A DNA stretch of 64,000 nt, taken from positions 171,673 through 235,672 of the IMG/VR virus record IMGVR_UViG_3300020473_001965. The stretch is one strand, 5' to 3'. Shown here one piece after another: positions 1,964-62,913 of the stretch (position 1 is its first letter; every line of letters starts with the position of its first letter). The notes beneath the pieces are model-generated. The model was given only the letters and a program-made list of their open reading frames with translations, ran no database searches and was not told the DNA's origin. A program made the position numbers and the translations under genes.

Positions 1964-2014
1964 CTTTAACTCCTCAAGACTACAGGATTAATTATTAACG
2001 TCAACGCCAAATTA

Positions 2015-3223
2015 TTAAACTTTAGATATGGAAAGTGGGAATGATTCTTTAAACCCGGAAATCACAGAGGCTGTTTTGACTAAATTCTTTAAATCGTCGA
2101 CAGCAAAAGGAGCTACATCCAAAAGCAGAGCATCGTGAATAATGTAAATGGGCGTTATGCCCAAGTCTTTTGCCCGGATCTCTTCAATAATTTTTCTAAA
2201 TCCGGACAGACACACGTCTACACCCGTCGATTGTATATAGTGACTCACAAGTAAATGTGAATCACACTTAGTGAATGTCAACGGGCGACCGTAATAGTTT
2301 TGTATTGAGCTTCCGCTTTCATGACACTCTCTTAACAACCTTCTAGCAAGTACGTCTATCTTAAAAAACGTTCTTATTTTATCCAGGACTATGGAAGCAT
2401 CGACGTCTCGACCGACAATAAGCTGTAACTTAACGGGCGATATACCGTAAAGTGCTCCCATGACTGCAATTTTTAACTTTACTCGATCAAGTTTTAGCCC
2501 TGTTTTTAAAGCTAAGCTATCGTAGATATCTTTATCAAATTCGACTCCGGCAAGGCACCCAGCTATTCGAGGCTCTAGAGAAGAGTAATCTACTTGTATT
2601 ATTCTTCCTCCGGGATATCTTGACTTAAAAATCTTTCTATGCTCTTTCTTAAGTGTAAGAATCTTGGGTCCTCTTTTAACAACTGTCCTTCCAGTCGCAC
2701 CTTGTTGATAGACAGGAGGTGGCAGCTTGTCGTCTGGCTTAGGACTAAAAGAATTAAGCGTTGATATCAATGTCGGGTTCGTTTCTTGAGCCTTTAGATC
2801 GTTAAGAATTTTTTTATCAATCAAGGCAGGTTGCAAGCTCGTCAGTGCTTCTCTGTTGACTAGAAAGTTGTCGACGTATGTTGTATCATTTATCTTGTCA
2901 AGTGCGCTCCAGAGATCAGCCACAAGGTTAGAAATATAACTTTGGAACACAGCTCGAGGGAGTGCATGATGCCATGGTATTGAAAGTCCAGCGGGTAGAC
3001 CACAAGTTGTATACGCAGTCACGTATTTTTCTGGTGGTCTGTCTCGTGGATCGATATTGAACATCAAGCACAAATCATTTAAAGACCTAACTGCATTGGG
3101 AGCATTTCCGTATATCCATGCATCTTCAGGTGGCGATGATACCCAAGAAAAGAGACCTGTACTCCTTTCACACAAAAGATTCTTATCTGTCCCTAAGAGG
3201 TTTTTTGAAATACAAACTTGCAC
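2015..3223 (-). CDS. polA: minimal family A DNA polymerase (polymerase domain only)
   Basis: GATGR, motif A DYSSLEPR, motif B RVKLKIAVMGALYG, YGRPL, IQSTGVD, motif C IIHDALL; no recognisable exonuclease domains; GTG start. Confidence 0.8.
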   Translation of the reverse strand: MQVCISKNLLGTDKNLLCERSTGLFSWVSSPPEDAWIYGNAPNAVRSLNDLCLMFNIDPRDRPPEKYVTAYTTCGLPAGLSIPWHHALPRAVFQSYISNLVADLWSALDKINDTTYVDNFLVNREALTSLQPALIDKKILNDLKAQETNPTLISTLNSFSPKPDDKLPPPVYQQGATGRTVVKRGPKILTLKKEHRKIFKSRYPGGRIIQVDYSSLEPRIAGCLAGVEFDKDIYDSLALKTGLKLDRVKLKIAVMGALYGISPVKLQLIVGRDVDASIVLDKIRTFFKIDVLARRLLRECHESGSSIQNYYGRPLTFTKCDSHLLVSHYIQSTGVDVCLSGFRKIIEEIRAKDLGITPIYIIHDALLLDVAPFAVDDLKNLVKTASVISGFKESFPLSISKV

Positions 3224-3228
3224 ATGTT

Positions 3229-3257
3229 AAAATAACACGCATAAAGAAAATGTTCAA
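3229..3257 (-). promoter_or_regulatory. sigma70-like promoter, probably giving a leaderless polA mRNA
   Basis: TTGAAC (3257-3252), 17 nt, TGn-TATTTT (3234-3229); GTG start 6 nt downstream of the -10. Confidence 0.5.
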
Positions 3258-6706: not shown

Positions 6707-6713
6707 AAGCCTA

Positions 6714-6998: not shown

Positions 6999-7001
6999 TC
7001 G

Positions 7002-10000
7002 TTAGTCTCCATTCGGCTTACTCTTTTCATATGGCCCTCTGGCAAGCTTACCTACAGAGTTTCCAGCATTGTAGATTGGTGCCCTGTTCATTCCGTACTT
7101 ATCTAATCCAGGCCCAATATCGTGGATTGGGGAGAATGAGATTGTAATCTGACAAGCTTTTGGCGCTTTTGATCCTTCTGAAGTTTCCCAGGTTATTTGA
7201 TCAAGCCACTGAAAGTCCATCTGAGTTATGAATCCTGCGAGGCCTCGACCCATGGAGGATTCAAATGCCCTGACAACTGGGTTTGTCTCAGAAGACATGA
7301 ATTCTCCAAAGTCTGGTGGGTCTGCAGCAGGTGCGTACTCAATTGAATCAGGATCTACTTCAAAGACCCCGGCCTTGGCAAGAATATAATACGGTATTAC
7401 AACTTTAGAAAGATCGAGATCCCTAACCTTCATAGCTTGTTGAAATGTCCCATATTTTAAAGCCGCTGCCGCCAGGGCGCCGGCGGCACCTACCACAGTT
7501 TTTCGGGCCGGAGGTATGGGCGCAGTGACTTTACAATGAGCTATTCCGTATTTTGATATATTGCCAAAATCGCCAGATGTCAATCCCATTTCTAAAGATT
7601 CTAGTGTTGGTTCGATTTTTGAAATCTCAAAGACCATACCAGACGGAACCCAAACTTGACGCATCTTTTCTTTTCCGTCCTTCTGGATCATGACTTTCAC
7701 TCTTTCTTTACTGGTGAATTTTGCGGAAATTGCGCCAAGGAGAGGCGGCTCGGCGTATTCTGGAGTTGCACTTTTATTAATCGCTGAATTTACATCTTCC
7801 GTCAGCTCGACTGCAGAGATGATATCAGATGCAGCCTCGGCAGCAAAGTCTGGATTTACACCTGGGCCGAAAAGCCTTGCCAGTGCAAATTTAGAATAAT
7901 TTGATTTTATTAAATCACCTAATCTCAATCGAATCATTGGAGATGCTGCTAGTACTTGTGAGAACGGGGCAGTAAAAGGTTTGTCATCATTTACGTCTGG
8001 GTTTTGCACCATGGTTCCGCCAGAATACTGTGGGTACATCAGTGTCGTCAGCTTGTTAATCTTCCACCACATCTCATCAAAATCCCTCGGATTAGTTGAG
8101 ACAACCCAGAAGGTCATTCCAATCGCTCGCTGCGTATTGTTGTAAATCATCACTGGATCTGCACGGCCGTACCCTTGATTTGAGTCATAATTGGCTGTAT
8201 AGGAATCAGATAGTGACGTCAAAAAAGCATTAAATGATACAATTTCGTTTGTTCTAATATCGTGAAAATAAAAAGGCATGTACTCGCCTTCGCAAAGATC
8301 TTCTACTTTTTTAACTAACTCGGCTGAAAGTCTTGTGTCGCCTGAATCGAGAACCTGTTGCTTGTATCTATGGTCATCCCCCAAAGCGTCTTTAAACTCA
8401 TTTTGATAGTTTGGATCTTCTAGACCGAATGATACTATTTCACCGCCGACAGATTTTGCCATTGTCAAGACGTCTGCACTTATCAAGTAAGTACTGGGAG
8501 GGGCTCCCTGGCGCCAAACTAGTGTTTGATCAGCCCCGTCGATTGTATATCTACTTTTACCTACTCGATATTCTTGAATTCCTGCCTTTAACTCTATTGC
8601 ATCGATTGATGAGACTTTTGTATCAATAACTCCTGAAGCATCGCCAGGTTTAGAAATTATCTTGGATGCATCAGCTTCAATAAGGACGTCTTCGTAGATA
8701 TCACCCATTGCTGCTAGCATGTTTATGTAGCCAATTAGTTTCGAGTTCCTAATTGTGGCAAAGAGGTCAGCAATTGCGCCTAAGGCAGCGAACAGACCTC
8801 CCTTGAAAATGTCACCAAACGCCAGGCCGATCTCAATGGTCGATCTAATGACAGCACGGAAAACAATTGAATAATAACCCGGGGAGTCATTAATGTTTCT
8901 CCCGCCCGGCAAGAATGAAAATATCCCACCTGAGCCTCCTTTGAAGGCATCTACTTCTCCAAAGAAAATTTCTGTCCCTAATGATGTCGCCTCGACAAAA
9001 TCCATGTTCGTAGGACGTACACCGAAGAACGATGGTTTAACAAGCGCCGCTCCGCTGCCTCGGAAAAATTTACCTATTTTTCCTGGGTTTGGGTTGTTAT
9101 ACGATGATACTAGCTTATTACTCGATGGAAGAGGTAGGATCAGTGCACCAATAATCATCGCCACAAGATCTACTAGTATTCCAATTGCTAGAACAAGCGC
9201 AATGACAAGCACAGTCATTCCCATTTTTGGTGTTGCGCCGAACGGTTCAAGTGGGCTGTTTAAAACACCCCAAGATTTATCACGAAAACCCTTGTAGACT
9301 TTTGTAACAGATGCACCTTTAGTCTCTCGGTTTCCTCCGCCGAAACCGGGTTTCTCGACATTACGAGCAAGAACATCATTGGGGTCAACTTTTGTAGCCC
9401 CTAGCTGCTGGAGAGAAGGTAGGATCGCTGCCAAGTCGCCCGTTGACGGTGAGTGTCCTGTCGCAGCTACGATGAGCTTGTGACCGATATCCTTCATCTC
9501 TTTTAGCTTAACACCCCCAGAGTTACTATCATACTCACCTAATTTGTCTTGCTTCGAAACAAACTTCAAAGCATCAACATCACCTGATGACATCGGGGAT
9601 CTGGATGGGTTGTAGGGTGACTTACCATCGGGGTGGAATCTATTGAATTGTGTCAAAACTGGGCTTATTAAAGCTTTGTCACGAGCCTGCTTAAGGGCTT
9701 CATGACCGGTTTTTGCCTCATCTTTTCCTGACTTATCAACAACATCAGCTATTTGATTTCCATCAAAGGTTCCGCCGCCCTTAGCATCGGGTGCAGACCC
9801 TCCTGAAATGGTATCATAATACGATCTTAGACCTGCTGCGTCGATGTTTTTATCGTATGAAACAGCAGATCCGCCGGATCCTACTGTGTGGTGGGCGCGG
9901 CCGCCGTCGTCAGCTATGATAGAAAAATCTTCAGATCCCGGTTTTAAAAAATACCTGTTCGATTCATTTGTTTCTTTTGCAACATAGTCACCTAACGCAT

Positions 10001-10151
10001 CTCGAATATCTTCTCGAAGATCATCAACACCAGGATCAGCTGTACCGTCTCCCTGCTGATCGATTATATAATCGATCTTGTCAGTACCTTCTTTGGCACC
10101 ATAGGGGTGTGCCCTTAGAAAATCTTTTAATGTTGATCTTGACTCTGCCAC
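7002..10151 (-). CDS. tail tube initiator-like baseplate protein with large N-terminal extension
   Basis: FNAFLTSLSDSYTANY...GYGRADPVMIYNNTQRAIGMTFWV...LTTLMYPQY...PMIRLRLGD...GFITQMDF resembles tube-fold initiators; lies between TMP and LysM genes; GTG start. Confidence 0.6.
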   Translation of the reverse strand: MAESRSTLKDFLRAHPYGAKEGTDKIDYIIDQQGDGTADPGVDDLREDIRDALGDYVAKETNESNRYFLKPGSEDFSIIADDGGRAHHTVGSGGSAVSYDKNIDAAGLRSYYDTISGGSAPDAKGGGTFDGNQIADVVDKSGKDEAKTGHEALKQARDKALISPVLTQFNRFHPDGKSPYNPSRSPMSSGDVDALKFVSKQDKLGEYDSNSGGVKLKEMKDIGHKLIVAATGHSPSTGDLAAILPSLQQLGATKVDPNDVLARNVEKPGFGGGNRETKGASVTKVYKGFRDKSWGVLNSPLEPFGATPKMGMTVLVIALVLAIGILVDLVAMIIGALILPLPSSNKLVSSYNNPNPGKIGKFFRGSGAALVKPSFFGVRPTNMDFVEATSLGTEIFFGEVDAFKGGSGGIFSFLPGGRNINDSPGYYSIVFRAVIRSTIEIGLAFGDIFKGGLFAALGAIADLFATIRNSKLIGYINMLAAMGDIYEDVLIEADASKIISKPGDASGVIDTKVSSIDAIELKAGIQEYRVGKSRYTIDGADQTLVWRQGAPPSTYLISADVLTMAKSVGGEIVSFGLEDPNYQNEFKDALGDDHRYKQQVLDSGDTRLSAELVKKVEDLCEGEYMPFYFHDIRTNEIVSFNAFLTSLSDSYTANYDSNQGYGRADPVMIYNNTQRAIGMTFWVVSTNPRDFDEMWWKINKLTTLMYPQYSGGTMVQNPDVNDDKPFTAPFSQVLAASPMIRLRLGDLIKSNYSKFALARLFGPGVNPDFAAEAASDIISAVELTEDVNSAINKSATPEYAEPPLLGAISAKFTSKERVKVMIQKDGKEKMRQVWVPSGMVFEISKIEPTLESLEMGLTSGDFGNISKYGIAHCKVTAPIPPARKTVVGAAGALAAAALKYGTFQQAMKVRDLDLSKVVIPYYILAKAGVFEVDPDSIEYAPAADPPDFGEFMSSETNPVVRAFESSMGRGLAGFITQMDFQWLDQITWETSEGSKAPKACQITISFSPIHDIGPGLDKYGMNRAPIYNAGNSVGKLARGPYEKSKPNGD

Positions 10152-10167: not shown

Positions 10168-10416
10168 CTAAGTATTCATCTTCTGAATATTCTCTTTAAA
10201 CTCCTGACGCTCTTCGTCAGATAGCTCATTTAATCCTTGATAGAATTTTGCGATGTTTGGCATGAATATACTGGTTATCTCTTCAACAAAACCTTCTACG
10301 TGTGCCTTCTGTTCTTCATCGAGCTGATCGTAGTACTTCTTGAATCGATCGTCTTCTTGAAGCTTCTTTTTAAAGTCTACATCTAAAAGGTCGGATGGGT
10401 TTACTCTTGATGACAT
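10168..10416 (-). CDS. hypothetical helical protein
   Basis: 82 aa ORF with AGGAGA SD between TMP and baseplate genes. Confidence 0.7.
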   Translation of the reverse strand: MSSRVNPSDLLDVDFKKKLQEDDRFKKYYDQLDEEQKAHVEGFVEEITSIFMPNIAKFYQGLNELSDEERQEFKENIQKMNT

Positions 10417-10426: not shown

Positions 10427-13400
10427 CTATTTGGGTGGTGGTGTCTTCTTAAATGGTAAGTGTACTTTGAAGTTTTCTGTTTGTAACATTGCCTTGGCCA
10501 GATTCTCTGCGTCAAGATGAATATCAAGCGCGAAGTTAATCGATATCGGCTTGTCTTTGATCTTAGTAAATTCTTCTACGATTGATAAATGATCTTCAAT
10601 ATCATCGATTGTGGCTTTCAATTCAATGTTAGGAATGCCTTCAACCAGCGTGTTGATTGTAGCAAGCTCCATTGCCAGTGCTTCGATGTGCCCCTGGAGC
10701 GTAACGGCAGCTTCGATTCTCTCATCCCAGAGTTCTGGAATATAACCATAAAGGAATTCATGCTGGAATAAATCAGCTAGGTCGTTACCATCTGTAATGG
10801 CGTCTTGCATGTAACTGTACATCTCAGCAAAAGTTCCCGCGTATGCACCCATATTGTATCCCGAAGCATTGGCATTATACAACATACTCCCGATAGATTC
10901 AAATGCATTGGCCATGACTACACCCGCTTCATTAAAGTTGTCTGTCATTGATGGACCCAGCTTCATTATCTTCTTTGATGACTCGTTCAAGTTGGACATC
11001 GAGTCCAACGTACTGTTAACCAACCCTACTTGTTTCTGGATAGCTTCTTGCTGCTCGGCGAAGGCGGACATGCCCCGGCCCATCATTTCGAGCATTGTTC
11101 CTCCGGTTGCCCGGTCTAGCGCCGTTTTGCCGTCTTCGGTTTTGGCGCGGGCTGTGTCTCGAACTCGTTGCTGACCATGCATGCCGGCGAGGTGCTGCAA
11201 CTTGTTCTCCATCATCTCATCTGCGGAGATGTCCAACATCCCCAGGGCAACCAGTTGGTCATTTCCTGCGCCCCCGAAGCCGGCTTCACTCATTTCTCGC
11301 TGCATCTTCTTCCCGGCCAAGCCCATTTCAATCATCTCTACTTGGAACTTGTCATTCATCTTCTTGATGCGTCGAAACATGCCGTCGGGCCCGAGCATAA
11401 CAGATTCAAAATCAGAGATTGCGTTTTCCATCGCAGACTGAGCAGCTGCTCGATCGAACTCAATATCTGATGCATCGTGCATTGTCTTGACGATGTCTTG
11501 AACACCTCCGACGACTGTCTGGATCATCTGAAATGCTGTCTGAATGCCTTTACCAGTTGCTGATAATTCTCCAGTATTGGGATCTATTCCGAATTTTCCT
11601 GCAATTGCCGGACCTATTGCCTCCATTGCGTCGAGCGCAGTGTTAATACCTGAGTCTAGGCCTTCAATCAGCCAGCTACCATTCTGCTTCATTACTTTGG
11701 ATTCAGATCCGAACTTCCAAAATTTCTTCAGGGAATCGCCCATTCCGGACGAAACCCTGCCCCACCCTTTCTTTAGACTGTTTAGCGCTCGTGACTTCTT
11801 GAATGGCGCGCCGAAACCGTCGAGTAGCCAACTGCCTGCTTTTTTAAGTCCTCCTAGAATCTTCCTTCCTGCGCCTGATTTAGTGAACTTCTTTAAAAAG
11901 CCTAGAGACTTTGAGAACATTCCGGTAAACTTTTTACTCTTACCTTCTTTTTCAACACCCATGTTGATACCTTGCATCATCGGGCGACCAATCCACTTTG
12001 CAAGGTTTTTGGCAGGGGATCCTAACCCGATCCAGCCTCCTACTTTCTTTAATCCTCTTTTGACACTTTTCTTTGCAGAGCGGCCGATGTCTTTTGCTTT
12101 TTTAACTCCAGAATCGATGCCATCCATGATGCCCTTTCCTACTTCTTTTGCTTTGGCTTTGGCTTTATCTTTGAGGTCCCCCAAGCCTTTCATGAGATTA
12201 CTGCCAAGGTTTTTTGCCATGCTCCAACCCTTCTTCACCCACTTGGCTGCTTTCTTAAACGGCCAAAGGAGAATGTTGACGATTGCATCTTTAGCCGCTG
12301 CAAAACCGTCGATCATCTCTTGCATTATTGGTGGGAGCGATCCGGGCAATAGCCAAGACCATACGCTCTTAATTATTTCCCAGGCTTTCTTGAACGGCCA
12401 AGTTATGATGTCGACGAAGGCTTGTCCGACTGAGGCGAACCATTCAATAGTGCTGTTCCAGGCGTCTCTAATCCAGTTTCCAAGATCTTGGAAGGCGCCC
12501 CAGATTACTTCTACAAATAGCCAGTGGAAGGCGTCTCCGAGACCTGCCCAAGAATCTATGAGCCCTTGTTCAAAATTAAAAAAACCAAATGTTAGGAAGT
12601 CACCAAAAGCTGCACCCCACTCTAAGAAGGCTCGAATACCCGAACCTATAGTGTCAAATACCTTTGATATAACACTGCCCGTACCAGTCCAAATGTCTTT
12701 AACCCTCGAGAGGTGCTCACCCATCTTTTTAAGCCCTTGCCAGAAGAAAACTACGGGTGTTACTAGCTTTCCAAACAACTTGCCGACACCTTTCAGCAGG
12801 CCTGCAAACTTTGATGTCTTTGGAAAAACATTTCCAAAGAAAGTACTGAATTTACTTCCTACGTCTTTAATCCATTTTCCGGCTGACTGAAACCACTGAC
12901 CTACTGTATAAAGAGGTTTAAACATCTTATCAGCAATCTTTCCAGGGCCGGTCAGCCAACTGAGGAATCCGTTCCACGCTGCTTGAAAAGGTTTGAAAAT
13001 AAAGCTGGCACCCTTCATTGCGTTCCAGATTGTACTGAAGAACCCTCCAATAAACGCTCCCGCACCAATAATACCCAGACCTGCAACTTTAAGAAGAACA
13101 GCAGGGCTGAAAAGTGCCATTAAAGCTAAAACGATATAGGCCGCTTCTTTAGGATTAGATTTTGCCCATTCATAAATTCCCTTGCAGATCTCGGCCAGAA
13201 TCAGTTCGATGTAGGGCCAGAGAGCTTTGAAGAATCGACCCCATGCGCTGAAGAGTTTCGCAAAACCCGATTCCATCTGGCCCACGTTTCCTTCCCCGGT
13301 TAGGGAGGCTTCGAACATTGGGAAGAATTCCTCTAGAGCCTTTGCAGCAGCAGTTACTAGTTCAGCTGCCATTCCGGCGAGGTAGTCCAGGGCTTTCATA

Positions 13401-15058: not shown

Positions 15059-15132
15059 TAGACAAACCGCCTTACGCTACAGTACCTGTAAAATAAATAT
15101 ACAGTTCTTAAAAATCTAGGTATATAAGGCGC

Positions 15133-15378: not shown

Positions 15379-15406
15379 TTGGTACCTCAAGATTAATTAT
15401 CTTCTA

Positions 15407-17571: not shown

Positions 17572-17629
17572 TTTGGGTTTCTCCTGATGATATTATGCTA
17601 ATAATTATTACACTCATTTATTTTCTATC

Positions 17630-21097: not shown

Positions 21098-21139
21098 TCC
21101 CCAGTTCTCCTATAGAGTGTTTCAATTCATAACTATTCA

Positions 21140-24322: not shown

Positions 24323-24437
24323 TAGTGTTTACTCCTCGAGTAGTTACATTATAAATATTAACGAACAGGTCAAAATACCACTGCCTGTGATTGTTTGTGA
24401 AAACTACCTGCTCAAGTGTGTTTAAAAATCTTTCCAT

Positions 24438-27617: not shown

Positions 27618-27764
27618 GTAAACCAACTCCTTGAAATCGCACTTATAAGTATAAGAAAAACAGCCTAATTTCTTTTTGAAGAAATGCTAACTTTTCAAAC
27701 AATTGCAATGTGATCTGTCTACAGTTTGTCACCAGGCAAAATAAAAAAAATCGATTTATTTCTA

Positions 27765-27962: not shown

Positions 27963-27975
27963 ATAGTAAGTATCT

Positions 27976-28009
27976 AAAAAAAAGCCGCCGACTCAAAAGA
28001 GTCGGCGGC
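27976..28009 (-). terminator. intrinsic terminator after the decoration-like gene
   Basis: GCCGCCGACTC-AAAA-GAGTCGGCGGC (11 bp perfect stem) followed by 8 U on the minus strand. Confidence 0.9.
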
Positions 28010-28030
28010 AGTAAGAATTAATCGCTTCTA

Positions 28031-28914: not shown

Positions 28915-29619
28915 CTAATTATCAAAGCTGTATTTGAAGTTACTTATTAAGTCTGAGAAACTATTGGTGACAATGTCATACGACTTATTTGTGTAGTACA
29001 CTCTGTAATCGTACTTAGACTTCCTAATGTCAGTTTTTAGTTTCGGTATATTTAATGGTCCTAATCCTATCATACCACATACCATAGAAAAGTCAACTTC
29101 TAGGTCCTCATATCTTATAATAAAATCTAGGGGTAATTCGTAAAAAAGTTTATATCTTGAAGTGAACCAATCAATGATTCGCTCTTGTTTTCCTGTTTTG
29201 CTAAACGAGGCATACGTCTCTAAAAAAGTTAAAAATTTATCTTGTAGCGTTTTTGACCCATCATGTTGATCTGGTTTTAAAATGTGATTAGTCAGTGTCG
29301 TATCAGGTGAATAAAATGACCACCAAAAATAACTCACAACTGCATCGTATGGATTTCTAATAGTTGTAAATTTAAAGTATTTGTCTATGTTCAGATTATT
29401 TCTCAAAACTTCGGTAGGTGGCGTATGTTGATGCCACACTGGCCTGTAGCCTAATCGATTATTTCTTTCATGATATCCCAAAGATTTTTCGCCATCATAA
29501 GGTGAACCTGTTAGAATATCGTCAGGTCCGCAAAAGGGTGTCATGGCAAGCTCAAGACTTGATCCTGCTGATTTCATTTGCTTAAAAAAGACAAAACTAT
29601 GTCTATGAGATAAAATCAT
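28915..29619 (-). CDS. sulfotransferase family protein (Sulfotransfer_2-like)
   Basis: 5'-PAPS loop FKQMKSAGSS, 3'-PAPS motif IRNPYDAVVS, DFIIRYEDL. Confidence 0.8.
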   Translation of the reverse strand: MILSHRHSFVFFKQMKSAGSSLELAMTPFCGPDDILTGSPYDGEKSLGYHERNNRLGYRPVWHQHTPPTEVLRNNLNIDKYFKFTTIRNPYDAVVSYFWWSFYSPDTTLTNHILKPDQHDGSKTLQDKFLTFLETYASFSKTGKQERIIDWFTSRYKLFYELPLDFIIRYEDLEVDFSMVCGMIGLGPLNIPKLKTDIRKSKYDYRVYYTNKSYDIVTNSFSDLISNFKYSFDN

Positions 29620-33230: not shown

Positions 33231-33260
33231 GAATTTAATTATGTCTTAGAATTTAATTAT
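33231..33260 (-). promoter_or_regulatory. tandem ATAATTA motifs upstream of the scaffold-MCP genes
   Basis: 12 nt direct repeat GAATTTAATTAT (+ strand 33231-33242 and 33249-33260). Confidence 0.55.
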
Positions 33261-34134: not shown

Positions 34135-34142
34135 CTAATTAA

Positions 34143-34634
34143 TTATTCTCCAGCCCTAGTACCAAGGCCGTAAGCTTTCAATGTGTGCTTAGCAATTCCT
34201 GCGGAAGATTCAGCAGGGATTCGAGAAGTAGCAGCTGGACCGGAGCCGAATTCGGATCCTGGGTCTGCAGGAGTGGGTCCTTCAGGCATGTCCTTGGCAT
34301 TCATGCTTCCCTCTCCTGGTGAAGCTAAGCCCGGAGTAAATGGTGTACTAGGAAGGCCGCCGCCTCCGGTGGCTACATCAGCAAAGTTTGGAGCATTAGT
34401 ATAATCTCTATCTTGCTCGCCGAAAGTATGACCACCATCATTAACAATAGCGCTAAGAAGAAGATCATCACCCTGTGCCTGGATGGAATCTCTTGTCAAA
34501 GTTCCGTTATGTATTGGCGAACCTGGGTAGGCTGTTTGTAAATTTTCCGTCCCGTGAGTCGAAAGTCCGGAGACACCGCCCTTTGCGAATTCGGATGAAA
34601 CATAATCAACTGTGTTTTGGTTGTGTGAAGGCAT
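34143..34634 (-). CDS. hypothetical P/G/S-rich protein (head module)
   Basis: 163 aa, AAGGA SD, ATATTTA motif at 34689-34683. Confidence 0.7.
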   Translation of the reverse strand: MPSHNQNTVDYVSSEFAKGGVSGLSTHGTENLQTAYPGSPIHNGTLTRDSIQAQGDDLLLSAIVNDGGHTFGEQDRDYTNAPNFADVATGGGGLPSTPFTPGLASPGEGSMNAKDMPEGPTPADPGSEFGSGPAATSRIPAESSAGIAKHTLKAYGLGTRAGE

Positions 34635-34734
34635 TTTTTGTTTCCTTGTTGTCTAGTCTGTGGTCATTGAAGACTACAAGATTAAATATCACTAACAATG
34701 AAAATCTTTATAAGATGATTTAAATTTGAGAGTA

Positions 34735-40703: not shown

Positions 40704-40704
40704 A

Positions 40705-41091: not shown

Positions 41092-41131
41092 TATGTTAAC
41101 TCCAAAAGTCGTTATAAATATTCACTGTGTT

Positions 41132-50687: not shown

Positions 50688-51383
50688 TTAGCTGCTTATT
50701 TGAACTTCGAAATCATAAACTGAGCCGTCTTGGACTCCTGTTGCCTTAACAAAGGTGCTGATTTTTGAATCTGAACCTCCGTAAATTGTAAAATGATTGT
50801 CTGTAAGTGATTTTACTTCAAGAGTCATAGTTAATTTTGATCCACCGATAGATGTCACCGCCTCATCTCGAAGCAATAGGTATGTTGCCATATTATTGAA
50901 ATCTATATTGTCGGGAGACTGCCCTTGAACTTGCAAGAAAAGATTGCTCATTGTGACTATAAAAGCTTGATTTCTTAATTCTACATCAATAGAATCTTCA
51001 TTATCTATCTCTTGCGTCAACGTTATTGATCTTGTTGTGTTTGATGTTCTTCCCATCGTAACAATAGATCCGGCAACTCCTTCCCCAGATAATGATAAAC
51101 TTGGCAACCTCAAAATACTTGGGTTCGATAAGCTAATTAGCTTGTATTTTAATGCCTGATCGCCATTTGTCAATGCTTCGAAAATAGGTGTGTTCTTTTC
51201 TACTTTTTCTTTACCAACAGTTCGACCGTACTTTTTAATCACTCCATAATCAACTTCATCATCGCCTAGCGCGAATTTAGTAATTGAAAAAGAGCCGTCA
51301 TTCCGAGAAAGGAACTTTCGGCCGGTGTCTGTTAGAACTGCGTCTAAGATTATATTGTTTGTGCTGTGATCGAGAAACCCCAT
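50688..51383 (-). CDS. virion structural protein (tail-collar-like N-terminus)
   Basis: AVLTDTGRKFLSRNDGSFSITKFALGDD. Confidence 0.6.
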   Translation of the reverse strand: MGFLDHSTNNIILDAVLTDTGRKFLSRNDGSFSITKFALGDDEVDYGVIKKYGRTVGKEKVEKNTPIFEALTNGDQALKYKLISLSNPSILRLPSLSLSGEGVAGSIVTMGRTSNTTRSITLTQEIDNEDSIDVELRNQAFIVTMSNLFLQVQGQSPDNIDFNNMATYLLLRDEAVTSIGGSKLTMTLEVKSLTDNHFTIYGGSDSKISTFVKATGVQDGSVYDFEVQISS

Positions 51384-51460
51384 GGATTACTTCTCCTCTT
51401 AAATTAATTATACATTTACCAAAAAATGTTAGTAAAACTATTTATTCTCTTCATTGTAAA

Positions 51461-57801: not shown

Positions 57802-60344
57802 CAGTAATTTCTCCCTTGTCGTCTTCTCTTAGAGGCAATCCCAGAGGATATTAACTGCCCTATCCGGGTAGTCTCCCCTCTTGTAAAGTCTACGTAAACC
57901 GGCGTCACCTTGAATTCGATAGGGCCGCGAATTCTAGGTGTAAATCTGTCAATTAAAACGTATCGATTTCTACCTGGAATAGATACAGTGTGAAAAATAG
58001 GTAAAGAGGACTTTCTTAACTCGACTGAAACTATAAAGTGATCAATTTTTGAAGCGTCTCCGCGGATTGACCAGGTTAGCTTATTTTCATATCTATTAAT
58101 TTTTTCGACATCTCCCCGCCTTACTTCAGGTAATTGATCTTTGAAGCTTGCATCTATTGTTTTGACCGATCCTGTCTTCGCTGCATTAAAGATCGTATTT
58201 TTTCCAGTATTTCTAGATCTACCTCGGCGAGGTAAAAGCGTACCTGTCCTCAAAGCTTTTCTTGAAAGCTTTTTAGCAATAGCCACCCTGTACTTCCTTT
58301 TAGTTCTTCGATCAGTTCTAACTATTCGAGAGCGCCTCAAGAGCGCAGCCGGGTGTATTCTACACCCTGTAACTACATACCTGTATTCATTTCCGCTCTC
58401 GAGAGGTTTTAATCGACTTGTTCTGGAAAGTCTTCGATCGTCAAAAATAGAACTAGAGGAGGGATCAAATATGTTGAATTGTTCTCTCTCGCCTGTTGTT
58501 AGGTTGAACCTTTCGATCGAAAAGACAGTCAAAAAGTCTGCATTGTCTCTCATTTCTTCATTTTGCTCATCTGTATTGTAAAATCTAGCTGTACCAGACC
58601 TTTTTTGATAACGCTTGAGCATATTTGTAAGATTAGTTCTTCCAGAAGTCTGTGTCTCATCTGTCACTATTTTCATTCTTACGTTTGGAGAGCCATGCTT
58701 AGATATTCTTACATCTTCTAGCTCAAACTCAACTTCAGAATCTAGTTTTTGATACTCAACAAATGCTGTGTCGATTGTCCTTACTTTTAAACCGTCTAGA
58801 AAAGTTAGGTCGACTATGTACTCATAGACCCTACCGTCTCGAACAGAAGTGTCAATAAACTGCATTGACTCACTATCAATAATATGTTCGGGCGTGTCTA
58901 CATCTTTTAATTCTCTAAAAAGTACTTTAAATTTTTTCTCTTTAGCAGACAAGTCTCGTCGAAGAATTGACATTGTTATTGCTGATGTATCGAAATTTTT
59001 AACCTCTATACTTAGCCCATCAACGTCTGGTTGAAGAAATATCGAGCTAAACTTATTTCTAACTGCCCTATTTTCAGTTCCTATTTTACATGGCGGAGCT
59101 ACAACAGATCGAAACCCATAACCTCTTCTTCTACCTCGTACAGGTATTGCTCTATAGATTATTGGATTAGTGTTTTGAACATTATCAACAATTCTTAAGA
59201 ATCTTGTTCCGGTTGTCCTTGATCTTCCTCTCTTTCTAATCCTATATCTTCCTACAAGCTCATAGTCGGAATTGATTAAAATATCAGAATCATTAATAAT
59301 TCTTCTATATACTTCGATTGAATTTGCTTTTTTGTCTCGTTGTCTTATCTCTAAAACATTTTTTCCCGGTACACAATTAACATATCGAATAGAGGGTGCT
59401 CTTCTAGGGTATATGTAATCTGTATAAAACTTTGGATGGTTTAGTCTGTGAACTTCTCTTTGAAGAATTGCCCCTTCGCGATCAAGCAATTCAATAACTA
59501 CTGAAAGTTTTCTAGCTTTTCGAAACACTTTGTTACGAATGTTAATTCTTTTTCTTACAGTTACGTACTGCTTTTTTCGTCTAACAAGGACGGGTATCAG
59601 TTCATTGGGAGGTAACTCTTCTAGAGCAGTTGTGTTGTTTATTTCTGTGAGATCTTTTCTCAACGTCTTGATTATTTTGCTTCGTCGAGCATCTTTCTCC
59701 ATTTTTGCTGTTGTTAAGATACCCGTTATCGCATCATCTTGAGTGTTTATTTTGTCTCTTGACATTACTAAGTTTGCAGGGTCTTCATTGAACTTATTGA
59801 TAGCTTCAAGAGAAAAACTCTGAACGTTTGAGGAGTCTTGAGTGCTTAGGTCTTCTTCAGTTATCAAAGAGTTTACATAGCTTGTCTCTATGTTCTCATC
59901 AAGCAGATCAGAAACTGTCTTAAACTCATAAGTCCTTATATTCGGCAAAAGTGTTATAGCATCTTCTTCATCGAACCTATCAACATATCTTGCAATCTCA
60001 TTATTAAACCTGCTTGTTATGTCGATATGTCTTCGAGCAATTATGTCTCTTCTTCTTGCCCTTATTCTATCTTTAGTCTTTGGCCTATCCACTAAAAGAG
60101 CATCAATGGCAGACGCTGGTGTGAGACCTCCTGGGCCGTCAAATGCGGATTTTCTCTTTTTAGATGTGGGATATCTCAGAGTAATTCTTAGCTTAGATGC
60201 CCTTAGTTTTATGGCTCTTATTTGATTTACTCTGACTGCAAATTCATAGGTAAATCGCCTGCGACGTCTACTATAATTTACTAAGTTGATGAATTCATCA
60301 TCAACATCAATTGCGTCTATTTCTTGTGATGTAAAAGCCTTCAT
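57801..60344 (-). CDS. Arg-rich putative virion protein with FN3-like repeats
   Basis: 847 aa; IEVYRR...YRAIPV, YEYIVDL, YRYVVTG, LTWSI...IDHFIV. Confidence 0.55.
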   Translation of the reverse strand: MKAFTSQEIDAIDVDDEFINLVNYSRRRRRFTYEFAVRVNQIRAIKLRASKLRITLRYPTSKKRKSAFDGPGGLTPASAIDALLVDRPKTKDRIRARRRDIIARRHIDITSRFNNEIARYVDRFDEEDAITLLPNIRTYEFKTVSDLLDENIETSYVNSLITEEDLSTQDSSNVQSFSLEAINKFNEDPANLVMSRDKINTQDDAITGILTTAKMEKDARRSKIIKTLRKDLTEINNTTALEELPPNELIPVLVRRKKQYVTVRKRINIRNKVFRKARKLSVVIELLDREGAILQREVHRLNHPKFYTDYIYPRRAPSIRYVNCVPGKNVLEIRQRDKKANSIEVYRRIINDSDILINSDYELVGRYRIRKRGRSRTTGTRFLRIVDNVQNTNPIIYRAIPVRGRRRGYGFRSVVAPPCKIGTENRAVRNKFSSIFLQPDVDGLSIEVKNFDTSAITMSILRRDLSAKEKKFKVLFRELKDVDTPEHIIDSESMQFIDTSVRDGRVYEYIVDLTFLDGLKVRTIDTAFVEYQKLDSEVEFELEDVRISKHGSPNVRMKIVTDETQTSGRTNLTNMLKRYQKRSGTARFYNTDEQNEEMRDNADFLTVFSIERFNLTTGEREQFNIFDPSSSSIFDDRRLSRTSRLKPLESGNEYRYVVTGCRIHPAALLRRSRIVRTDRRTKRKYRVAIAKKLSRKALRTGTLLPRRGRSRNTGKNTIFNAAKTGSVKTIDASFKDQLPEVRRGDVEKINRYENKLTWSIRGDASKIDHFIVSVELRKSSLPIFHTVSIPGRNRYVLIDRFTPRIRGPIEFKVTPVYVDFTRGETTRIGQLISSGIASKRRRQGRNY

Positions 60345-61279
60345 TATTCAAAAACCAACGTAAACATGTTAACAAAAGTGTACGAATCTTTACTGTCAGG
60401 AAATACTTTTCCTACGAAAAAAACGTGCTTTTCAGGAAAATCTTCATCTCCTGTGACAAATTCTCCAAAATCAATGACATCAAGCTTTTTAAAAGTTGTC
60501 TGGCCGATTTCAAAAAACTGCCCTATTAAATTATTCTCTAGTGACGTTTCATAGAACGTAATAGTTTCTTTCTCCCTTCCCTTAAGCTCAGCAGCTAGAT
60601 CTTCGTACTTCATCATCGGATTTTGACCTAAGTCTGGATAATCTCCAAGAGGTAGTTTGTCACCTACTGTGTTTGTTGCAGCATTTACAGGAGGCAAATA
60701 TAAAAAGTTTGCAACATGAGAAAGGCGTTTATCTTGAAAAAGAGATTCGACATTGTCAATAGAAGTCTCGCTAAGGTCACCTTGCTCAAAAGGTGCGTCA
60801 GGCCTGATGTTGAACTTCATGCTAAGTTTGTCAATATTGAACTTATTATGTCCTAGAAATGCGTTTTTTGTCCCGATAACATTGTTCTTTTCAAAACTGT
60901 CAATTGTTCCAGACAGCATGTCTGAAGCAGCACTATTAAACTGTATTGAATTTTTTACAGCGCTCTGTTTTTTGGTTCCACTTGAACCAGAAAGCACCTT
61001 GCTTCCTAAAGATGCCGCGCCCTCTGCAGAAAAGGGCAGCATAAATCCGCTATCATCTGTCTCAAAAGTTAGCTGATCATGTATTGTATTGGCAGCTTCG
61101 AAGAACAACCTTGACTGTGCGTCAGAAGAGCCACTCACTATATCACGCTCATAAAAAGTATGTGTATCAGTAAATGAAGCGTACTCTATCTTCAATTTTC
61201 CAGCAGCAATCTGCTGTCTCCCACTATAAGTGACAATTGAATCTAGTATTCGTGTCTTTTTATCTAGTATGCCTGACAT
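60344..61279 (-). CDS. virion structural protein, N-terminus paralogous to 50688-51383
   Basis: MSGILDKKTRILDSIVTYSGRQQIAAGKLKIEYASFTD versus MGFLDHSTNNIILDAVLTDTGRKFL. Confidence 0.55.
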   Translation of the reverse strand: MSGILDKKTRILDSIVTYSGRQQIAAGKLKIEYASFTDTHTFYERDIVSGSSDAQSRLFFEAANTIHDQLTFETDDSGFMLPFSAEGAASLGSKVLSGSSGTKKQSAVKNSIQFNSAASDMLSGTIDSFEKNNVIGTKNAFLGHNKFNIDKLSMKFNIRPDAPFEQGDLSETSIDNVESLFQDKRLSHVANFLYLPPVNAATNTVGDKLPLGDYPDLGQNPMMKYEDLAAELKGREKETITFYETSLENNLIGQFFEIGQTTFKKLDVIDFGEFVTGDEDFPEKHVFFVGKVFPDSKDSYTFVNMFTLVFE

Positions 61280-61296
61280 GTTGCCTCAAATTATAA

Positions 61297-62913
61297 CTAT
61301 CCACAGTACAAAAATCCGTACACATCTGTTGCTAATCCTTCAGAATTAAATGAGATGTCTTCCATGGACTTACCTACTGTACTACTCCTAATAATATCGT
61401 CGGATTGCTTCATAAGATAACCAGGTACATCTGATGTTACAAGGAGATCGCCTTTTGAAACACTTCCATTTTGGTTGCAAACTTTAAAACCGGTCAGGAT
61501 CGATTCGGTTTCACCTTCGTTGTGCTGCTTCGTGTCACCAATAGAAGCTACCTTCCAAAGTTTCTTAAACTCAGGAGTTGCTTCCCACTCACCTGATTCA
61601 TTTTGTATCCCCTGGTCTACATAGTTTCCCAATGAGTCTCTTTTTTTCTTTGATTCACTAGGAACGTGATCACCGACATTTCTAAAAACTTCTAGGCCGG
61701 CTTCGTCGCGACGCTTATAGACTTGATACCAAACTATTCCAACAACATCTTTTTGATTTGCCGATGTTGTCTTTACTATCTTTTGGCCGGATAGTGACAC
61801 TGCGTCGCCTGTTTCTAGATCTTGATCAGATGAATAAATGTGGCCTTCCGTAAAAAAAGCGTCTTCAGACACATTACCGTCCAAGTATAGCATATTGCCA
61901 TCGCTGTTTCTTAAGTACGCGATTGTAGAACCACCTACTCCCAGATATATCCTTCCTGCCAAGGACGCGTGTGTACTACCGTAGAAAGAAAGAAAACCTT
62001 GAGTGGCTGAGTTAGATGTTGCAACCCTGAACTGGCCGGCTTCATCATCAGGGCAGGCCATACATAAAATGCTGAAACCGCTGTCTTCGATAACAACTGT
62101 ATTTCCTGTATTTGTCGTATGCCCTGCCGAACCTGATCTTATATGAAGTTTTGCGCCGGCGTTGGGAGAGGTGGTGCCAATGGAAAAAGATCCGTCTTTC
62201 TTAATATTGGCCTTGGAGTCGTTGTTCGTATAGAATCGTAGATCGTGATTTGTTACTGTTCCAATTTGTCCCAATTTTGTGGAGATGGAGTCTCTTGCGT
62301 CAACAAACATTTGGACGTTTCCACTGTAGCGATTTGCAGTCAGTTCAATCCTTGCTCTTTCAACTGCAGAAGTAGTTGCTGATCCGCCGAATTCTGCGCG
62401 GTCGCCAATCCTCAAGTTGCCTCCGTAAACATGAGCAATCGTACTAGGATACACGGTCCCTATTCCGACATACCCATCTTGGGTAATTGTTAGACGAGTA
62501 CTCGATTTGGTCTTGAGATACATTCCATGAGCACCGTTACCCTTGGCATCTATAGCTATCCCATCATTAGCGATTATATGGAGATCGTTTACAAACGTCT
62601 CCAAATACATGTGACTTTGGTTATACTGTAATAGGCAGCCCTTATATTCTCCTCCGTGATTGAATTTTATGACGGATCCGTTGGTTGACTTTCCATTGTT
62701 TAGTTCAAGCCTGCACCAGTCTTGAGAGTCATCTCTTATTGTTAAGTTTGCCTCGTATTTAGAACCTGACACTTTTGCAACTGTGTCCTTGTTGACAGAA
62801 TTGCTCTTTTTTCCTATCAGGGTCTTATGAGGAATTATAACTTTTTTAATATTCCTGTTACTGTCAACTGACTTATGTACTGCCTTTTTCCTATACTCAT
62901 CTTGTGACGACAT
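61297..62913 (-). CDS. tail fibre-like protein with putative C-terminal intramolecular chaperone domain
   Basis: GYVGIGTVYP and GSFSIGTTSP...KLHI fibre repeats; C-terminal GDAV...VVGIV...KGDLLVTSDVPG...TVGK resembles peptidase_G2/IMC-type domains. Confidence 0.55.
   Translation of the reverse strand: MSSQDEYRKKAVHKSVDSNRNIKKVIIPHKTLIGKKSNSVNKDTVAKVSGSKYEANLTIRDDSQDWCRLELNNGKSTNGSVIKFNHGGEYKGCLLQYNQSHMYLETFVNDLHIIANDGIAIDAKGNGAHGMYLKTKSSTRLTITQDGYVGIGTVYPSTIAHVYGGNLRIGDRAEFGGSATTSAVERARIELTANRYSGNVQMFVDARDSISTKLGQIGTVTNHDLRFYTNNDSKANIKKDGSFSIGTTSPNAGAKLHIRSGSAGHTTNTGNTVVIEDSGFSILCMACPDDEAGQFRVATSNSATQGFLSFYGSTHASLAGRIYLGVGGSTIAYLRNSDGNMLYLDGNVSEDAFFTEGHIYSSDQDLETGDAVSLSGQKIVKTTSANQKDVVGIVWYQVYKRRDEAGLEVFRNVGDHVPSESKKKRDSLGNYVDQGIQNESGEWEATPEFKKLWKVASIGDTKQHNEGETESILTGFKVCNQNGSVSKGDLLVTSDVPGYLMKQSDDIIRSSTVGKSMEDISFNSEGLATDVYGFLYCG

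What the first reader, a model, noticed from the sequence alone, without database searches (positions are those of the whole stretch)
1989..61300. Recurrent ATANTTA motif upstream of virion genes: candidate novel late promoter
Seen (+ strand TAANTAT): 1989, 10169, 15094, 15394, 17602, 21130, 24352, 27646, 27967, 28916, 33236, 33254, 34140, 34683, 41115, 51405, 61294, with near matches at 28586, 31622 and 50685. Each lies about 5-50 nt upstream of a start codon, it is duplicated before scaffold-MCP, and no -35 is evident. The TATTTATA instances are the reverse complement of the T4 late promoter TATAAATA. In two cases (27962, 34134) the start codon is only 4-5 nt downstream. Inference: recognition site of a phage late sigma factor or RNAP.
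Basis: partly seen in the sequence, partly recalled or inferred. Interest (0 to 1): 0.65.

Follow-up and report, generated by a model that had tools for sequence, protein, structure and literature searches.

The report
Late-gene promoter box of a marine jumbo phage
A 7-base signal (ATA-N-TTA) in front of the virion-gene operons of this marine T4-related jumbo phage is real, points the same way as the genes, and is conserved at the same gene positions in dozens of related phages, so it is most likely their version of the phage T4 late promoter, read by a phage-made sigma factor.

Summary
All 17 listed sites exist. The window-wide count is not above chance (37 vs 41 expected). The signal lies in location and direction. 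In the window's 29 intergenic gaps there are 13 gene-sense copies and 1 antisense, against 2.5±1.6 in shuffles. Genome-wide the figures are 39 vs 12.5±3.6.

In 80 related loci, ATATTTA and ATACTTA are the top non-ribosome-binding-site 7-mers in intergenic sense DNA. The exact box scores 224 sense vs 44 antisense, and nearly every single-base variant is unbiased. It sits upstream of the same orthologous genes: before the scaffold-like/capsid operon in 45/60 relatives, before the terminase operon in 16/18, the adaptor in 17/24 and a sheath gene in 6/8. It is absent before protease (0/43), TerL (0/25) and MCP (2/71). No -35 element is conserved.

A separate -35/-10 class precedes the small-gene region, DNA polymerase and an RpoD-like sigma gene.

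The phage encodes two candidate readers: an RpoD-like sigma lacking region 4.2, and a divergent gp55-like sigma whose best structural match is T4 gp55. No transcription start data exist.

Verdict: a real late-promoter box, a new variant of the T4 type (nATAnTTA vs TATAAATA).

The parts
33236..33242 (-). ATAATTA box, proximal copy of a tandem pair, 34 nt before the start of the 518-aa scaffold-like gene (31645-33201) that heads the MCP operon
   Evidence: The gene before MCP carries the box within 120 nt upstream in 45 of 60 relatives.
33254..33260 (-). ATAATTA box, distal copy of the tandem pair (12-nt repeat ATAATTAAATTC)
   Evidence: The tandem arrangement is seen in only 2 of 60 relatives.
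41115..41121 (-). ATATTTA box 23 nt before the 128-aa gene (40705-41091) that heads the TerL-portal-protease operon
   Evidence: Orthologous position carries the box in 16 of 18 relatives, while TerL itself has it in 0 of 25.
27646..27652 (-). ATACTTA box 19 nt before the head-tail adaptor-like gene (26448-27626)
   Evidence: Orthologs: 17 of 24.
24352..24358 (-). ATATTTA box 29 nt before tail-sheath paralog 2 (21140-24322)
   Evidence: Orthologs: 6 of 8, at 24-38 nt.
21130..21136 (-). ATAGTTA box 32 nt before tail-sheath paralog 1 (17630-21097)
17602..17608 (-). ATAATTA box with GTA prefix, 30 nt before the 162-aa gene 17083-17571
   Evidence: Belongs to the GT(A/G)ATAnTTA subclass: 11 copies on the coding strand vs 1 on the other.
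15094..15100 (-). ATATTTA box 35 nt before the tape-measure gene (10427-15058)
15394..15400 (-). ATAATTA box. The likely true start is the ATG 15 nt downstream, preceded by GAGG.
1989..1995 (-). ATAATTA box 25 nt before small ORF 1733-1963, with GAGGAG in between
27967..27973 (-). ATACTTA box directly after a hairpin plus T-run (about 27976-28010), 4 nt before small ORF 27765-27962. This is a terminator-then-promoter arrangement.
34683..34689 (-). ATATTTA box with GTG prefix, 48 nt before gene 34143-34634
51405..51411 (-). ATAATTA box 21 nt before gene 50688-51383, with GAGGAG in between
34140..34146 (-). ATAATTA box that contains the stop codon of gene 34143-34634 and lies 5 nt before the ATG of gene 33532-34134. 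Candidate leaderless start, or a chance match.
   Evidence: A peak at 5 nt in the box-to-start distance is also seen in relatives.
10169..10175 (-). ATACTTA overlapping the stop codon of 10168-10416, 17 nt before the GTG of 7002-10151. Weaker candidate.
61294..61300 (-). ATAGTTA overlapping the stop codon of 61297-62913, 14 nt before gene 60344-61279. Weaker candidate.
28916..28922 (-). ATAATTA overlapping a stop codon, with the ribosome-binding site GGAG following directly. Probably not a promoter for 28610-28906.
1703..1730 (-). The only copy in the window of the other promoter-like class (TGTAAA-N-TGTATGAT: a -35-like element plus an extended -10), 17 nt before gene 1104-1685

Best explanation
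ATA-N-TTA is the core, -10-type element of this phage lineage's late promoters. It marks the starts of the virion-gene operons: the scaffold-like/MCP operon, the terminase-portal-protease operon, adaptor, two sheaths, tape measure and baseplate. It has no sequence-specific -35.

It is read by host core RNA polymerase carrying a phage-encoded sigma. The most likely reader is the divergent gp55-like sigma of about 245 aa, encoded about 20 kb beyond the window's right end.

Aligned with the T4 late box (TATAAATA, -13 to -6), it reads nATAnTTA. A-12, T-11, A-10, T-7 and A-6 are kept, -13 and -9 are free, and -8 is T instead of A. Transcription would then start about 6 nt downstream of the last A. 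This gives short leaders that begin at or just before the ribosome-binding site and, where the ATG lies 5 nt downstream, leaderless mRNAs.

Shown: the enrichment, direction, positional conservation, lack of a -35, separation from a second promoter class, and presence of the sigma genes.

Inferred: that it is a promoter rather than an RNA signal, the register and start site, late timing, and which sigma reads it.
For: 1. Intergenic gene-sense excess. Window: 13 vs 1 antisense, expected 2.5±1.6. Genome: 39 vs 13, expected 12.5±3.6.

2. In 80 related loci (MCP 61-90% identical, GC 34-66%), ATATTTA (75 sense/15 antisense, expected 11) and ATACTTA (39/5) are the top 7-mers after the ribosome-binding site. 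The excess also holds in relatives of 50% GC or more: 18 vs 2.

3. Pooling the 80 related loci with this genome, the exact box scores 224 sense vs 44 antisense. Nearly all single substitutions are unbiased, and all four bases at N keep a 4-11-fold bias.

4. Orthologous footprint. The box is present before the scaffold-like gene in 45/60, the pre-TerL gene in 16/18, the adaptor in 17/24 and sheath-2 in 6/8. It is nearly absent before protease (0/43), TerL (0/25) and MCP (2/71).

5. It follows terminator-like hairpins (window 27967; Mel-JY01 and immuto virion modules).

6. A second class (TGTAA[AG], then 13-17 nt, then (TGn)TAnnAT) has 20 or more copies at 30-72 kb. It also precedes the RpoD-like sigma gene and DNA polymerase. 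Apart from one copy at 1703-1730, it is absent from the window's virion-gene gaps.

7. Box-to-start distance is bimodal, with a peak at 5 nt and a broad group at 14-35 nt. The box-to-ribosome-binding-site distance also peaks at 5 nt. Both fit a start 6 nt downstream, as in T4.

8. gp55-like sigma. Relatives' copies match PHROG 234, the T4 late sigma family, at E 6e-8 to 7e-6. This phage's own copy, L112:4102-4836, matches the family profile at E 2e-96. Its model's best PDB match is T4 gp55 in the late open complex, 7d7c_F (Z 11.2, 120 residues), and all top 50 matches are sigma factors.

9. The complete genomes of Microcystis phage Mel-JY01 and Flavobacterium phage immuto carry the gp55-like gene (E 1e-28, 7e-32) but no Sigma70_r2 match. 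Both show the box in virion-module gaps: 11 vs 3 and 8 vs 3.

10. In T4, gp55 inserts A-12, A-9 and A-8 into pockets (PMC7892883). The box keeps A-12, frees -9 and changes -8. A weak profile alignment maps Y97 (which stacks on A-12) to an invariant Tyr, and T99 (which contacts A-8) to Asn.
Against: No transcript 5' ends are available. The four metatranscriptome runs gave only a few short contigs inside the 518-aa gene and MCP, with no start or strand information.

The box is not confined to virion genes. About 24 intergenic copies lie elsewhere, including one heading the operon that runs into DNA polymerase and one upstream of the operon that contains the RpoD-like sigma gene. Most downstream genes there have no known function, so 'late' rests on the virion module.

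The gp55-like gene is not in the 235.7-kb record. It was found only in a longer 296,665-bp assembly that carries identical neighbouring proteins. Its own sequence does not reach PHROG 234, and hhalign against T4 gp55 alone is weak (E 0.026).

No sliding clamp was detected in the record, and gp33 was not sought.

In immuto most genome-wide copies sit in about 25 repeats of a longer early-type promoter with a -33-like TTG. So there the 7-mer alone does not mark late promoters.

Where the ribosome-binding site starts 0-5 nt after the box, the predicted start would cut into it.
Confidence: 0.6

Rival explanations
1. The box is a promoter element, but its reader is the phage's RpoD-like sigma (253 aa, G000 100985-101746). 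This sigma has regions 1.2, 2, 3 and 4.1 and lacks the region 4.2 helix-turn-helix, so it would direct -35-independent initiation. In this register ATAnT would be -11 to -7, with TA at -6/-5.
For: The sigma has Sigma70_r1_2, r2 and r3 and no r4. Alignment with E. coli sigma70 shows region 4.1 kept, and the 4.2 recognition helix missing in the whole family.

In the alignment Y430, W433 and W434 (region 2.3) and N383 and L386 (region 2.1) are conserved. From my own knowledge these contribute to strand opening and to the A-11/T-7 pockets. T440, a -12 contact, is Arg, which fits the lack of a base preference just 5' of the box.

The gene sits behind the other, -35-bearing promoter class, so it could be made early. 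It is present in 4 of 5 large relatives. A subclass GT(A/G)ATAnTTA has G where an extended -10 has it.
Against: Mel-JY01 and immuto have the box in their virion modules but no Sigma70_r2 match anywhere in their complete genomes, whereas both carry the gp55-like gene.

Q437, the T-12 contact, is retained, yet the box has no T-12 preference. The other promoter class (T-12, A-11, T-7, TG extension) fits an RpoD-type domain 2 better.

One large relative lacks the gene, but that record is only 45% complete.
Confidence: 0.2
2. The box is simply the -10 region of ordinary host-sigma promoters that are weak or activator-dependent, with no phage sigma involved.
For: ATAnT resembles the last five bases of TATAAT. 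A weak A/T-rich pattern lies about 14-22 nt upstream. In immuto, tATATTTA resembles the Bacteroidetes -7 element TAnnTTTG (consensus quoted from my own knowledge) and occurs with a -33-like TTG in about 25 early-type repeats.
Against: The same 7-mer is kept in relatives of 34-66% GC and in phages of a cyanobacterium, a flavobacterium and ribosome-binding-site-using marine hosts, whose primary sigmas differ.

This genome's own -35/-10 class has a different -10 (TAnnAT with invariant T-12 and a TG extension) and a conserved -35-like element.

The fixed T-T-A 3' half and the free position 5' of the box are not sigma70-like. Two phage sigma genes exist.
Confidence: 0.1
3. The box acts in RNA, not DNA, for example as a processing site for an RNase or as an A/U-rich translation enhancer in the leader.
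For: It is direction-specific and lies close to start codons and ribosome-binding sites.
Against: It occurs at operon starts and right after terminator-like hairpins, not at the tight junctions inside operons. Its distance to the start codon varies from 5 to about 50 nt. Six fixed bases with one free position are typical of protein-DNA recognition of a -10 box. The 5-nt peak fits a transcription start.
Confidence: 0.06
4. Chance: A/T-rich intergenic DNA plus TAA stop codons create the 7-mer.
For: The whole-window count is not above shuffles. Four listed sites overlap stop codons.
Against: The shuffle tests used only intergenic DNA without stop codons and still gave z about 7. Sense outnumbers antisense 13:1 in the window and 224:44 in the clade. 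The box is conserved at orthologous positions and holds in GC-rich relatives.
Confidence: 0.02

Closest known systems
Phage T4 late promoter (TATAAATA at -13 to -6), read by gp55 with gp33 and the gp45 clamp (PMC2988020, PMC7892883)
   Same: A short A/T-only box at the -10 position, with no conserved -35. It stands before virion genes of a T4-superfamily myovirus (MCP, TerL, portal, protease and sheath all match T4-type families). A gp55-related sigma is present. Five of the eight T4 box positions are identical when aligned (A-12, T-11, A-10, T-7, A-6). The box-to-start spacing is compatible with a start 6 nt downstream.
   Different: -8 is T, not A, and -13 and -9 are free. The T4 box itself is absent in sense orientation (0 intergenic copies), and ATAnATA is unbiased in the clade. 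The gp55-like protein is about 60 residues longer, with a C-terminal domain that aligns with domain 4 of other sigmas. No gp45-type or beta-type clamp was detected in the 235.7-kb record, and gp33 was not sought. A second, RpoD-like sigma is also encoded. None of this has been tested biochemically.
Variant late boxes of other T4-like phages (for example Aeromonas phage Aeh1, a/gC at -13/-12; review PMC2988020)
   Same: Shows that the late box can drift within the T4 family while the system is kept.
   Different: The known variants change the 5' end of the box. This one changes -8, which in T4 is a base inserted into a deep gp55 pocket, and frees -9.
Sigma70-type extended -10 promoters (TGnTATAAT, -35-independent)
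   Same: A -10-only architecture. ATAnT could occupy -11 to -7. A subclass has G three bases upstream of the box. The phage's RpoD-like sigma lacks region 4.2.
   Different: There is no T-12 preference, TG is not general, and TA is fixed at the two positions after the hexamer. The genome's other promoter class is the one that looks like an extended -10 promoter.
Bacteroidetes primary-sigma -7 element TAnnTTTG (consensus from my own knowledge, not tested here)
   Same: tATATTTA, the commonest variant when preceded by T, matches TAnnTTT. In Flavobacterium phage immuto it occurs with a -33-like TTG.
   Different: In this clade the base before the box is unbiased, and C, A and G at the free position are equally sense-biased. 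These variants do not fit TAnnTTTG. This phage also uses strong AGGAG ribosome-binding sites, which I understand are unusual for Bacteroidetes.

Membership tests
T4-type late transcription system (late box + gp55 + gp33 + gp45) | 8-bp box TATAAATA on the non-template strand | tested here: not met
   0 gene-sense intergenic copies in the genome. ATAnATA is 81 sense vs 111 antisense in the clade. The box here is nATAnTTA.
T4-type late transcription system (late box + gp55 + gp33 + gp45) | No sequence conservation at the -35 position | tested here: met
   Flank profiles of 39 own sites and 169 relatives' sites show at most 0.18 bit per position upstream.
T4-type late transcription system (late box + gp55 + gp33 + gp45) | Box lies about one helical turn upstream of the transcription start | not testable with these tools
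   Only short metatranscriptome contigs were available. Indirect support: peaks at 5 nt for both box-to-ATG and box-to-ribosome-binding-site distances.
T4-type late transcription system (late box + gp55 + gp33 + gp45) | A gp55-family promoter-recognition protein is encoded | tested here: met
   Not in the 235.7-kb record. It is in the 296,665-bp assembly of the same phage: L112:4102-4836, E 2e-96 to the clade family. Clade members hit PHROG 234 at E 6e-8 to 7e-6. Best fold match is T4 gp55, 7d7c_F, Z 11.2. The homology is remote.
T4-type late transcription system (late box + gp55 + gp33 + gp45) | gp45-type sliding clamp acting as mobile activator | tested here: inconclusive
   PHROG 223, PF02916 and PF00712 gave no match in the 235.7-kb record. 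That record lacks about 61 kb relative to the longer assembly, and that part was not searched.
T4-type late transcription system (late box + gp55 + gp33 + gp45) | gp33 co-activator | not tested
   Not sought. The extra C-terminal, domain-4-like part of the gp55-like protein might take its place; this is an inference.
T4-type late transcription system (late box + gp55 + gp33 + gp45) | Boxes precede late (virion) genes | tested here: met
   Boxes stand before the sheaths, tape measure, adaptor, scaffold-like/MCP operon, TerL-portal operon and baseplate wedge genes. Timing itself was not measured.
Canonical sigma70 (-35/-10) promoter | -35 hexamer 16-18 bp upstream of a TAnnnT hexamer with T-12 | tested here: not met
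   No conserved -35 and no T preference 5' of the box. The genome's other promoter class meets these features.
Sigma70 protein family (for the 253-aa RpoD-like protein) | Regions 1.2, 2, 3 and 4 (4.2 helix-turn-helix for -35) | tested here: not met
   r1.2, r2 and r3 are over Pfam cut-offs, with no r4. The alignment shows 4.1 present and the 4.2 recognition helix absent. It is a member of the family by domains 2-3, but atypical.

The most novel reading that the evidence does not exclude
A large, mostly uncultured lineage of aquatic T4-superfamily phages has re-tuned the T4 late system. A two-domain gp55-like sigma combines a gp55-type domain 2 with a domain-4-like C-terminal part that may replace gp33. 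It would read a new -10-only box, nATAnTTA, whose changed base (-8) and freed base (-9) are two of the three bases that T4 gp55 inserts into pockets. Transcription would start 6 nt downstream, so that some late mRNAs are leaderless. A second phage sigma, RpoD-like without region 4.2, would serve another promoter class in the same genomes.
Probability: 0.35. Interest if true: 0.65.

Novelty: new variant of a known kind. Interest (0 to 1): 0.55.

Why it matters
T4 late transcription is a textbook case of -35-independent promoter recognition, and the TATAAATA box is regarded as nearly invariant across T4-like phages.

A lineage with hundreds of environmental members that keeps the architecture but changes a pocket-inserted base gives a natural specificity variant. 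It can be used to test how gp55-type sigmas read single-stranded -10 DNA.

The box also gives a simple rule for finding operon starts and late genes in a large group of marine and freshwater jumbo-phage contigs that are otherwise mostly unannotated. The likely sigma is labelled 'hypothetical protein' even in the two cultured relatives.

Those two phages, Microcystis phage Mel-JY01 and Flavobacterium phage immuto, make the hypothesis testable at the bench.

Tried and rejected
1. RNA evidence. One run search and one read-lay of 5,951 bases (within the 6,000-letter limit) gave only a few short metatranscriptome contigs in 31740-32708 and in MCP. There was no start, end or strand information.

2. 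A home-made EM motif search on intergenic DNA converged on low-information A/T motifs. The box came out top but diffuse, so k-mer and shuffle tests were used instead.

3. A T7-type single-subunit RNA polymerase (PF00940) gave no match, but the control rang nowhere, so this is uninformative.

4. The gp55 families PHROG 234 and 12791 gave no match in the 235.7-kb record. This was later explained: the gene lies beyond the record's end.

5. A profile search of the gp55-like family against PDB sequences gave nothing significant. Foldseek gave no match at E 0.001 or better, although sigma factors dominated the list. Only the second-look structural alignment gave a clear ranking.

6. Megablast of 20 kb of the window against the phage collection gave no match.

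7. PHROG scans of 20 genes downstream of boxes outside the window returned mostly no function, so early/late class could not be assigned there.

8. The genome-wide excess of ATATTTA in immuto (34 vs 4) was first taken as support and then discounted. About 25 copies belong to a longer early-type repeat. Only the virion-module counts are used.

9. Literature searches for this box, for immuto and for Mel-JY01 found no description of such a promoter.

11. No alternative genetic code was needed or used.

Full report
**What the window is.** The window is bases 171,673-235,672 of a 235,672-bp IMG/VR virus record (42.6% GC, CheckV completeness 87%). Nearly all genes are on the minus strand.

Family scans identify a T4-superfamily myovirus. 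They find a major capsid protein (29724-31607), portal (37071-39077), large terminase (39081-40703), prohead protease (35612-36223) and two tandem tail-sheath paralogs (17630-21097, 21140-24322). They also find a tape measure (10427-15058), an adaptor-like protein (26448-27626), and SbcC, primase and RuvC genes.

The nearest cultured phages are Microcystis phage Mel-JY01 and Flavobacterium phage immuto, at 35-46% protein identity. The DNA occurs in marine plankton metagenomes. Genes carry strong AGGAG-type ribosome-binding sites.

**The observation.** All 17 listed sites are exact and lie 3-52 nt upstream of a minus-strand start codon. The pair before the 518-aa gene that precedes MCP is a 12-nt direct repeat.

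The total count in the window, 37, is no higher than dinucleotide shuffles give (41±6). The signal therefore lies in location and direction:
- Window intergenic DNA: 13 gene-sense copies and 1 antisense, against 2.5±1.6 expected.
- Whole record: 39 sense and 13 antisense, against 12.5±3.6 expected, with no shuffle of 500 reaching 39.
- These tests used intergenic sequence without stop codons.

**Conservation.** A scan of IMG/VR with the capsid protein returned more than 600 relatives. The best 80 loci (61-90% identity, 34-66% GC) were analysed.
- In their intergenic, gene-sense DNA the strongest 7-mers after the ribosome-binding site are ATATTTA (75 vs 15 antisense, expected 11) and ATACTTA (39 vs 5).
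- Pooled with this genome, the exact box ATA-N-TTA scores 224 sense vs 44 antisense. Almost every single substitution of the six fixed bases is unbiased, and each of the four bases at N keeps a 4-11-fold bias.
- The excess also holds in relatives of 50% GC or more: 18 vs 2.
- The box is kept at orthologous positions although the surrounding DNA cannot be aligned. It stands before the gene preceding MCP in 45 of 60 relatives, before the small gene heading the terminase operon in 16 of 18, before the adaptor in 17 of 24 and before sheath-2 in 6 of 8.
- It is nearly absent before the protease (0 of 43), TerL (0 of 25) and MCP (2 of 71).
- This pattern is that of operon-start signals. Several copies follow hairpin-plus-T-run terminators.

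**Anatomy.** Flanks show no conserved -35, only a weak A about 19 nt and TT about 14-15 nt upstream of the box.

The distance from the box to the start codon is bimodal, with a peak at 5 nt and a broad group at 14-35 nt. The distance from the box to the ribosome-binding site also peaks at 5 nt. Both fit a transcription start at the sixth base after the box.

That is the geometry of the T4 late promoter, whose 8-bp box spans -13 to -6. About a dozen of the 5-7-nt cases in relatives have an ATG and no alternative downstream start, so they are candidate leaderless genes. Several others are probably mis-called starts.

**A second promoter class.** The same genome has 20 or more copies of a different, longer signal: TGTAA(A/G), then 13-17 nt, then (TGn)TAnnAT.
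- It lies mostly at 30-72 kb among small ORFs, and directly before the RpoD-like sigma gene and DNA polymerase.
- It has a -35-like element, a TG extension and an invariant T-12.
- Only one copy lies in the window (1703-1730). In the virion module ATA-N-TTA is the only promoter-like motif.
- This separation is the main sequence-based reason to call the box 'late'.
- It is not exclusive to virion genes. About 24 intergenic copies lie elsewhere, mostly before genes of unknown function. A subclass GT(A/G)ATAnTTA is concentrated at 68-137 kb.

**Who reads it.** No T7-type polymerase was found, but that search's control rang nowhere, so it is uninformative. There are two phage sigma candidates.

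*Candidate 1: the RpoD-like sigma.*
- It is a 253-aa protein at 100,985-101,746 with regions 1.2, 2, 3 and 4.1, but without the region 4.2 helix-turn-helix.
- It belongs to a family of thousands of similar proteins of about 250 aa in metagenomes.
- It is present in four of five large relatives.

*Candidate 2: the gp55-like protein.*
- Relatives' copies match the T4 late-sigma family PHROG 234 at E 6e-8 to 7e-6.
- The gene is absent from the 235.7-kb record. Synteny in two relatives placed it beyond the window's right end.
- Walking along a 296,665-bp ENA assembly that carries identical proteins found it about 20 kb out: L112:4102-4836, 244 aa, E 2e-96 to the family profile.
- Its AlphaFold model (mean pLDDT 73) has T4 gp55 in the late open complex (7d7c_F) as its best PDB match (Z 11.2, 120 residues). 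All top 50 matches are sigma factors, and its C-terminal third aligns with domain 4 of other sigmas.

*The comparison that separates them.* The complete genomes of Mel-JY01 and immuto contain the gp55-like gene (E 1e-28 and 7e-32, annotated 'hypothetical protein') but nothing that matches Sigma70_r2. Both show the box in their virion-module gaps, 11 vs 3 and 8 vs 3, often right after terminators. This favours the gp55-like protein.

*A caveat on immuto.* Its genome-wide excess (ATATTTA 34 vs 4) comes mainly from about 25 copies of a longer early-type repeat with a -33-like TTG. That figure is therefore not used as support.

**Relation to T4.** Aligned to TATAAATA, the box reads nATAnTTA.
- In the T4 open complex gp55 inserts A-12, A-9 and A-8 into pockets (PMC7892883).
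- Here A-12 is kept, -9 is free and -8 is T.
- A weak profile alignment (E 0.026) maps T4 Y97, which stacks on A-12, to a Tyr that is invariant in the clade. It maps T99, which hydrogen-bonds A-8, to Asn (Gln and Ser in immuto and Mel-JY01). This is suggestive only.
- No clamp of the gp45 or beta type was detected in the record, and gp33 was not sought. Clamp-coupled activation is therefore not established.

**Limits.** There are no transcript 5' ends. The literature searches found no prior description of this box.

**Verdict.** The feature is best described as a new variant of the T4-type late promoter, shared by a large aquatic phage lineage. The reverse-complement link to T4 and the three near matches should be dropped.

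Noticed in passing
G000 30-72 kb (minus strand), G000 101782-101810, 133789, 142727; window 1703-1730: A second, longer promoter-like class: T(A/G)GTGTAA(A/G), a spacer, then (G)TGnTAnnAT, often followed by TAGATAGtAAGGA. It has 20 or more copies among small ORFs and stands directly before the RpoD-like sigma gene and DNA polymerase. A similar architecture precedes the sigma gene in two relatives.
   Followed up: partly
G000 100985-101746 (minus strand; locus L004:1072-1833): An RpoD-like sigma of 253 aa with regions 1.2, 2, 3 and 4.1 but no region 4.2 helix-turn-helix. T440 is Arg and E458 is Gly. More than 8,000 similar proteins of about 240-260 aa occur in metagenomes, many on contigs over 100 kb. 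Its target promoters are unknown.
   Followed up: partly
window 17630-21097 and 21140-24322: Two tandem tail-sheath paralogs of 1,155 and 1,060 aa, each with its own upstream box. Only their C-terminal third or so (about 330 aa) matches sheath families.
   Followed up: no
L111/L112 (296,665-bp ENA assembly, just beyond the window's right end): The window ends inside a 2,219-aa gene. Upstream lie further giant genes of 1,195 and 1,173 aa with Laminin_G_3 domains, then baseplate wedge genes that each have a box 23 nt upstream, then the gp55-like gene within a glycosyltransferase-containing operon.
   Followed up: partly
window 1989 and 34683: These two box sites share a further 13-nt stretch immediately downstream, ATC(C/T)TGTAGTCTT. 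This suggests a duplicated promoter or a shared leader.
   Followed up: no
L129-L137 (Flavobacterium phage immuto, 60-76 kb): About 25 copies of a long repeat: AGTTGC, about 20 nt, then ATATTTAGGTATCAATAATTAAAAC before small genes. It holds two ATA-N-TTA boxes 14 nt apart and a -33-like TTG. A separate CTATTTATAAATAAA recurs just before start codons in the virion module.
   Followed up: partly
L117:1675-2373 (immuto gp118, YP_010114565.1) and L118:1765-2535 (Mel-JY01 WWT39502.1): The gp55-like sigma candidates of both cultured relatives are annotated 'hypothetical protein'. In both phages the gene is flanked by conserved small ORFs of about 100-130 aa, which could be cofactors.
   Followed up: partly
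G000 102970-104556: The phage encodes a GroEL-type chaperonin (PHROG 5725, E 3e-155), directly upstream of a box-headed operon that runs towards the RpoD-like sigma gene.
   Followed up: no
window 28915-29619: The gene directly after the MCP terminator matches a galactose-3-O-sulfotransferase family (PHROG 3347, E 3e-12). This is an unusual gene within a virion module.
   Followed up: no
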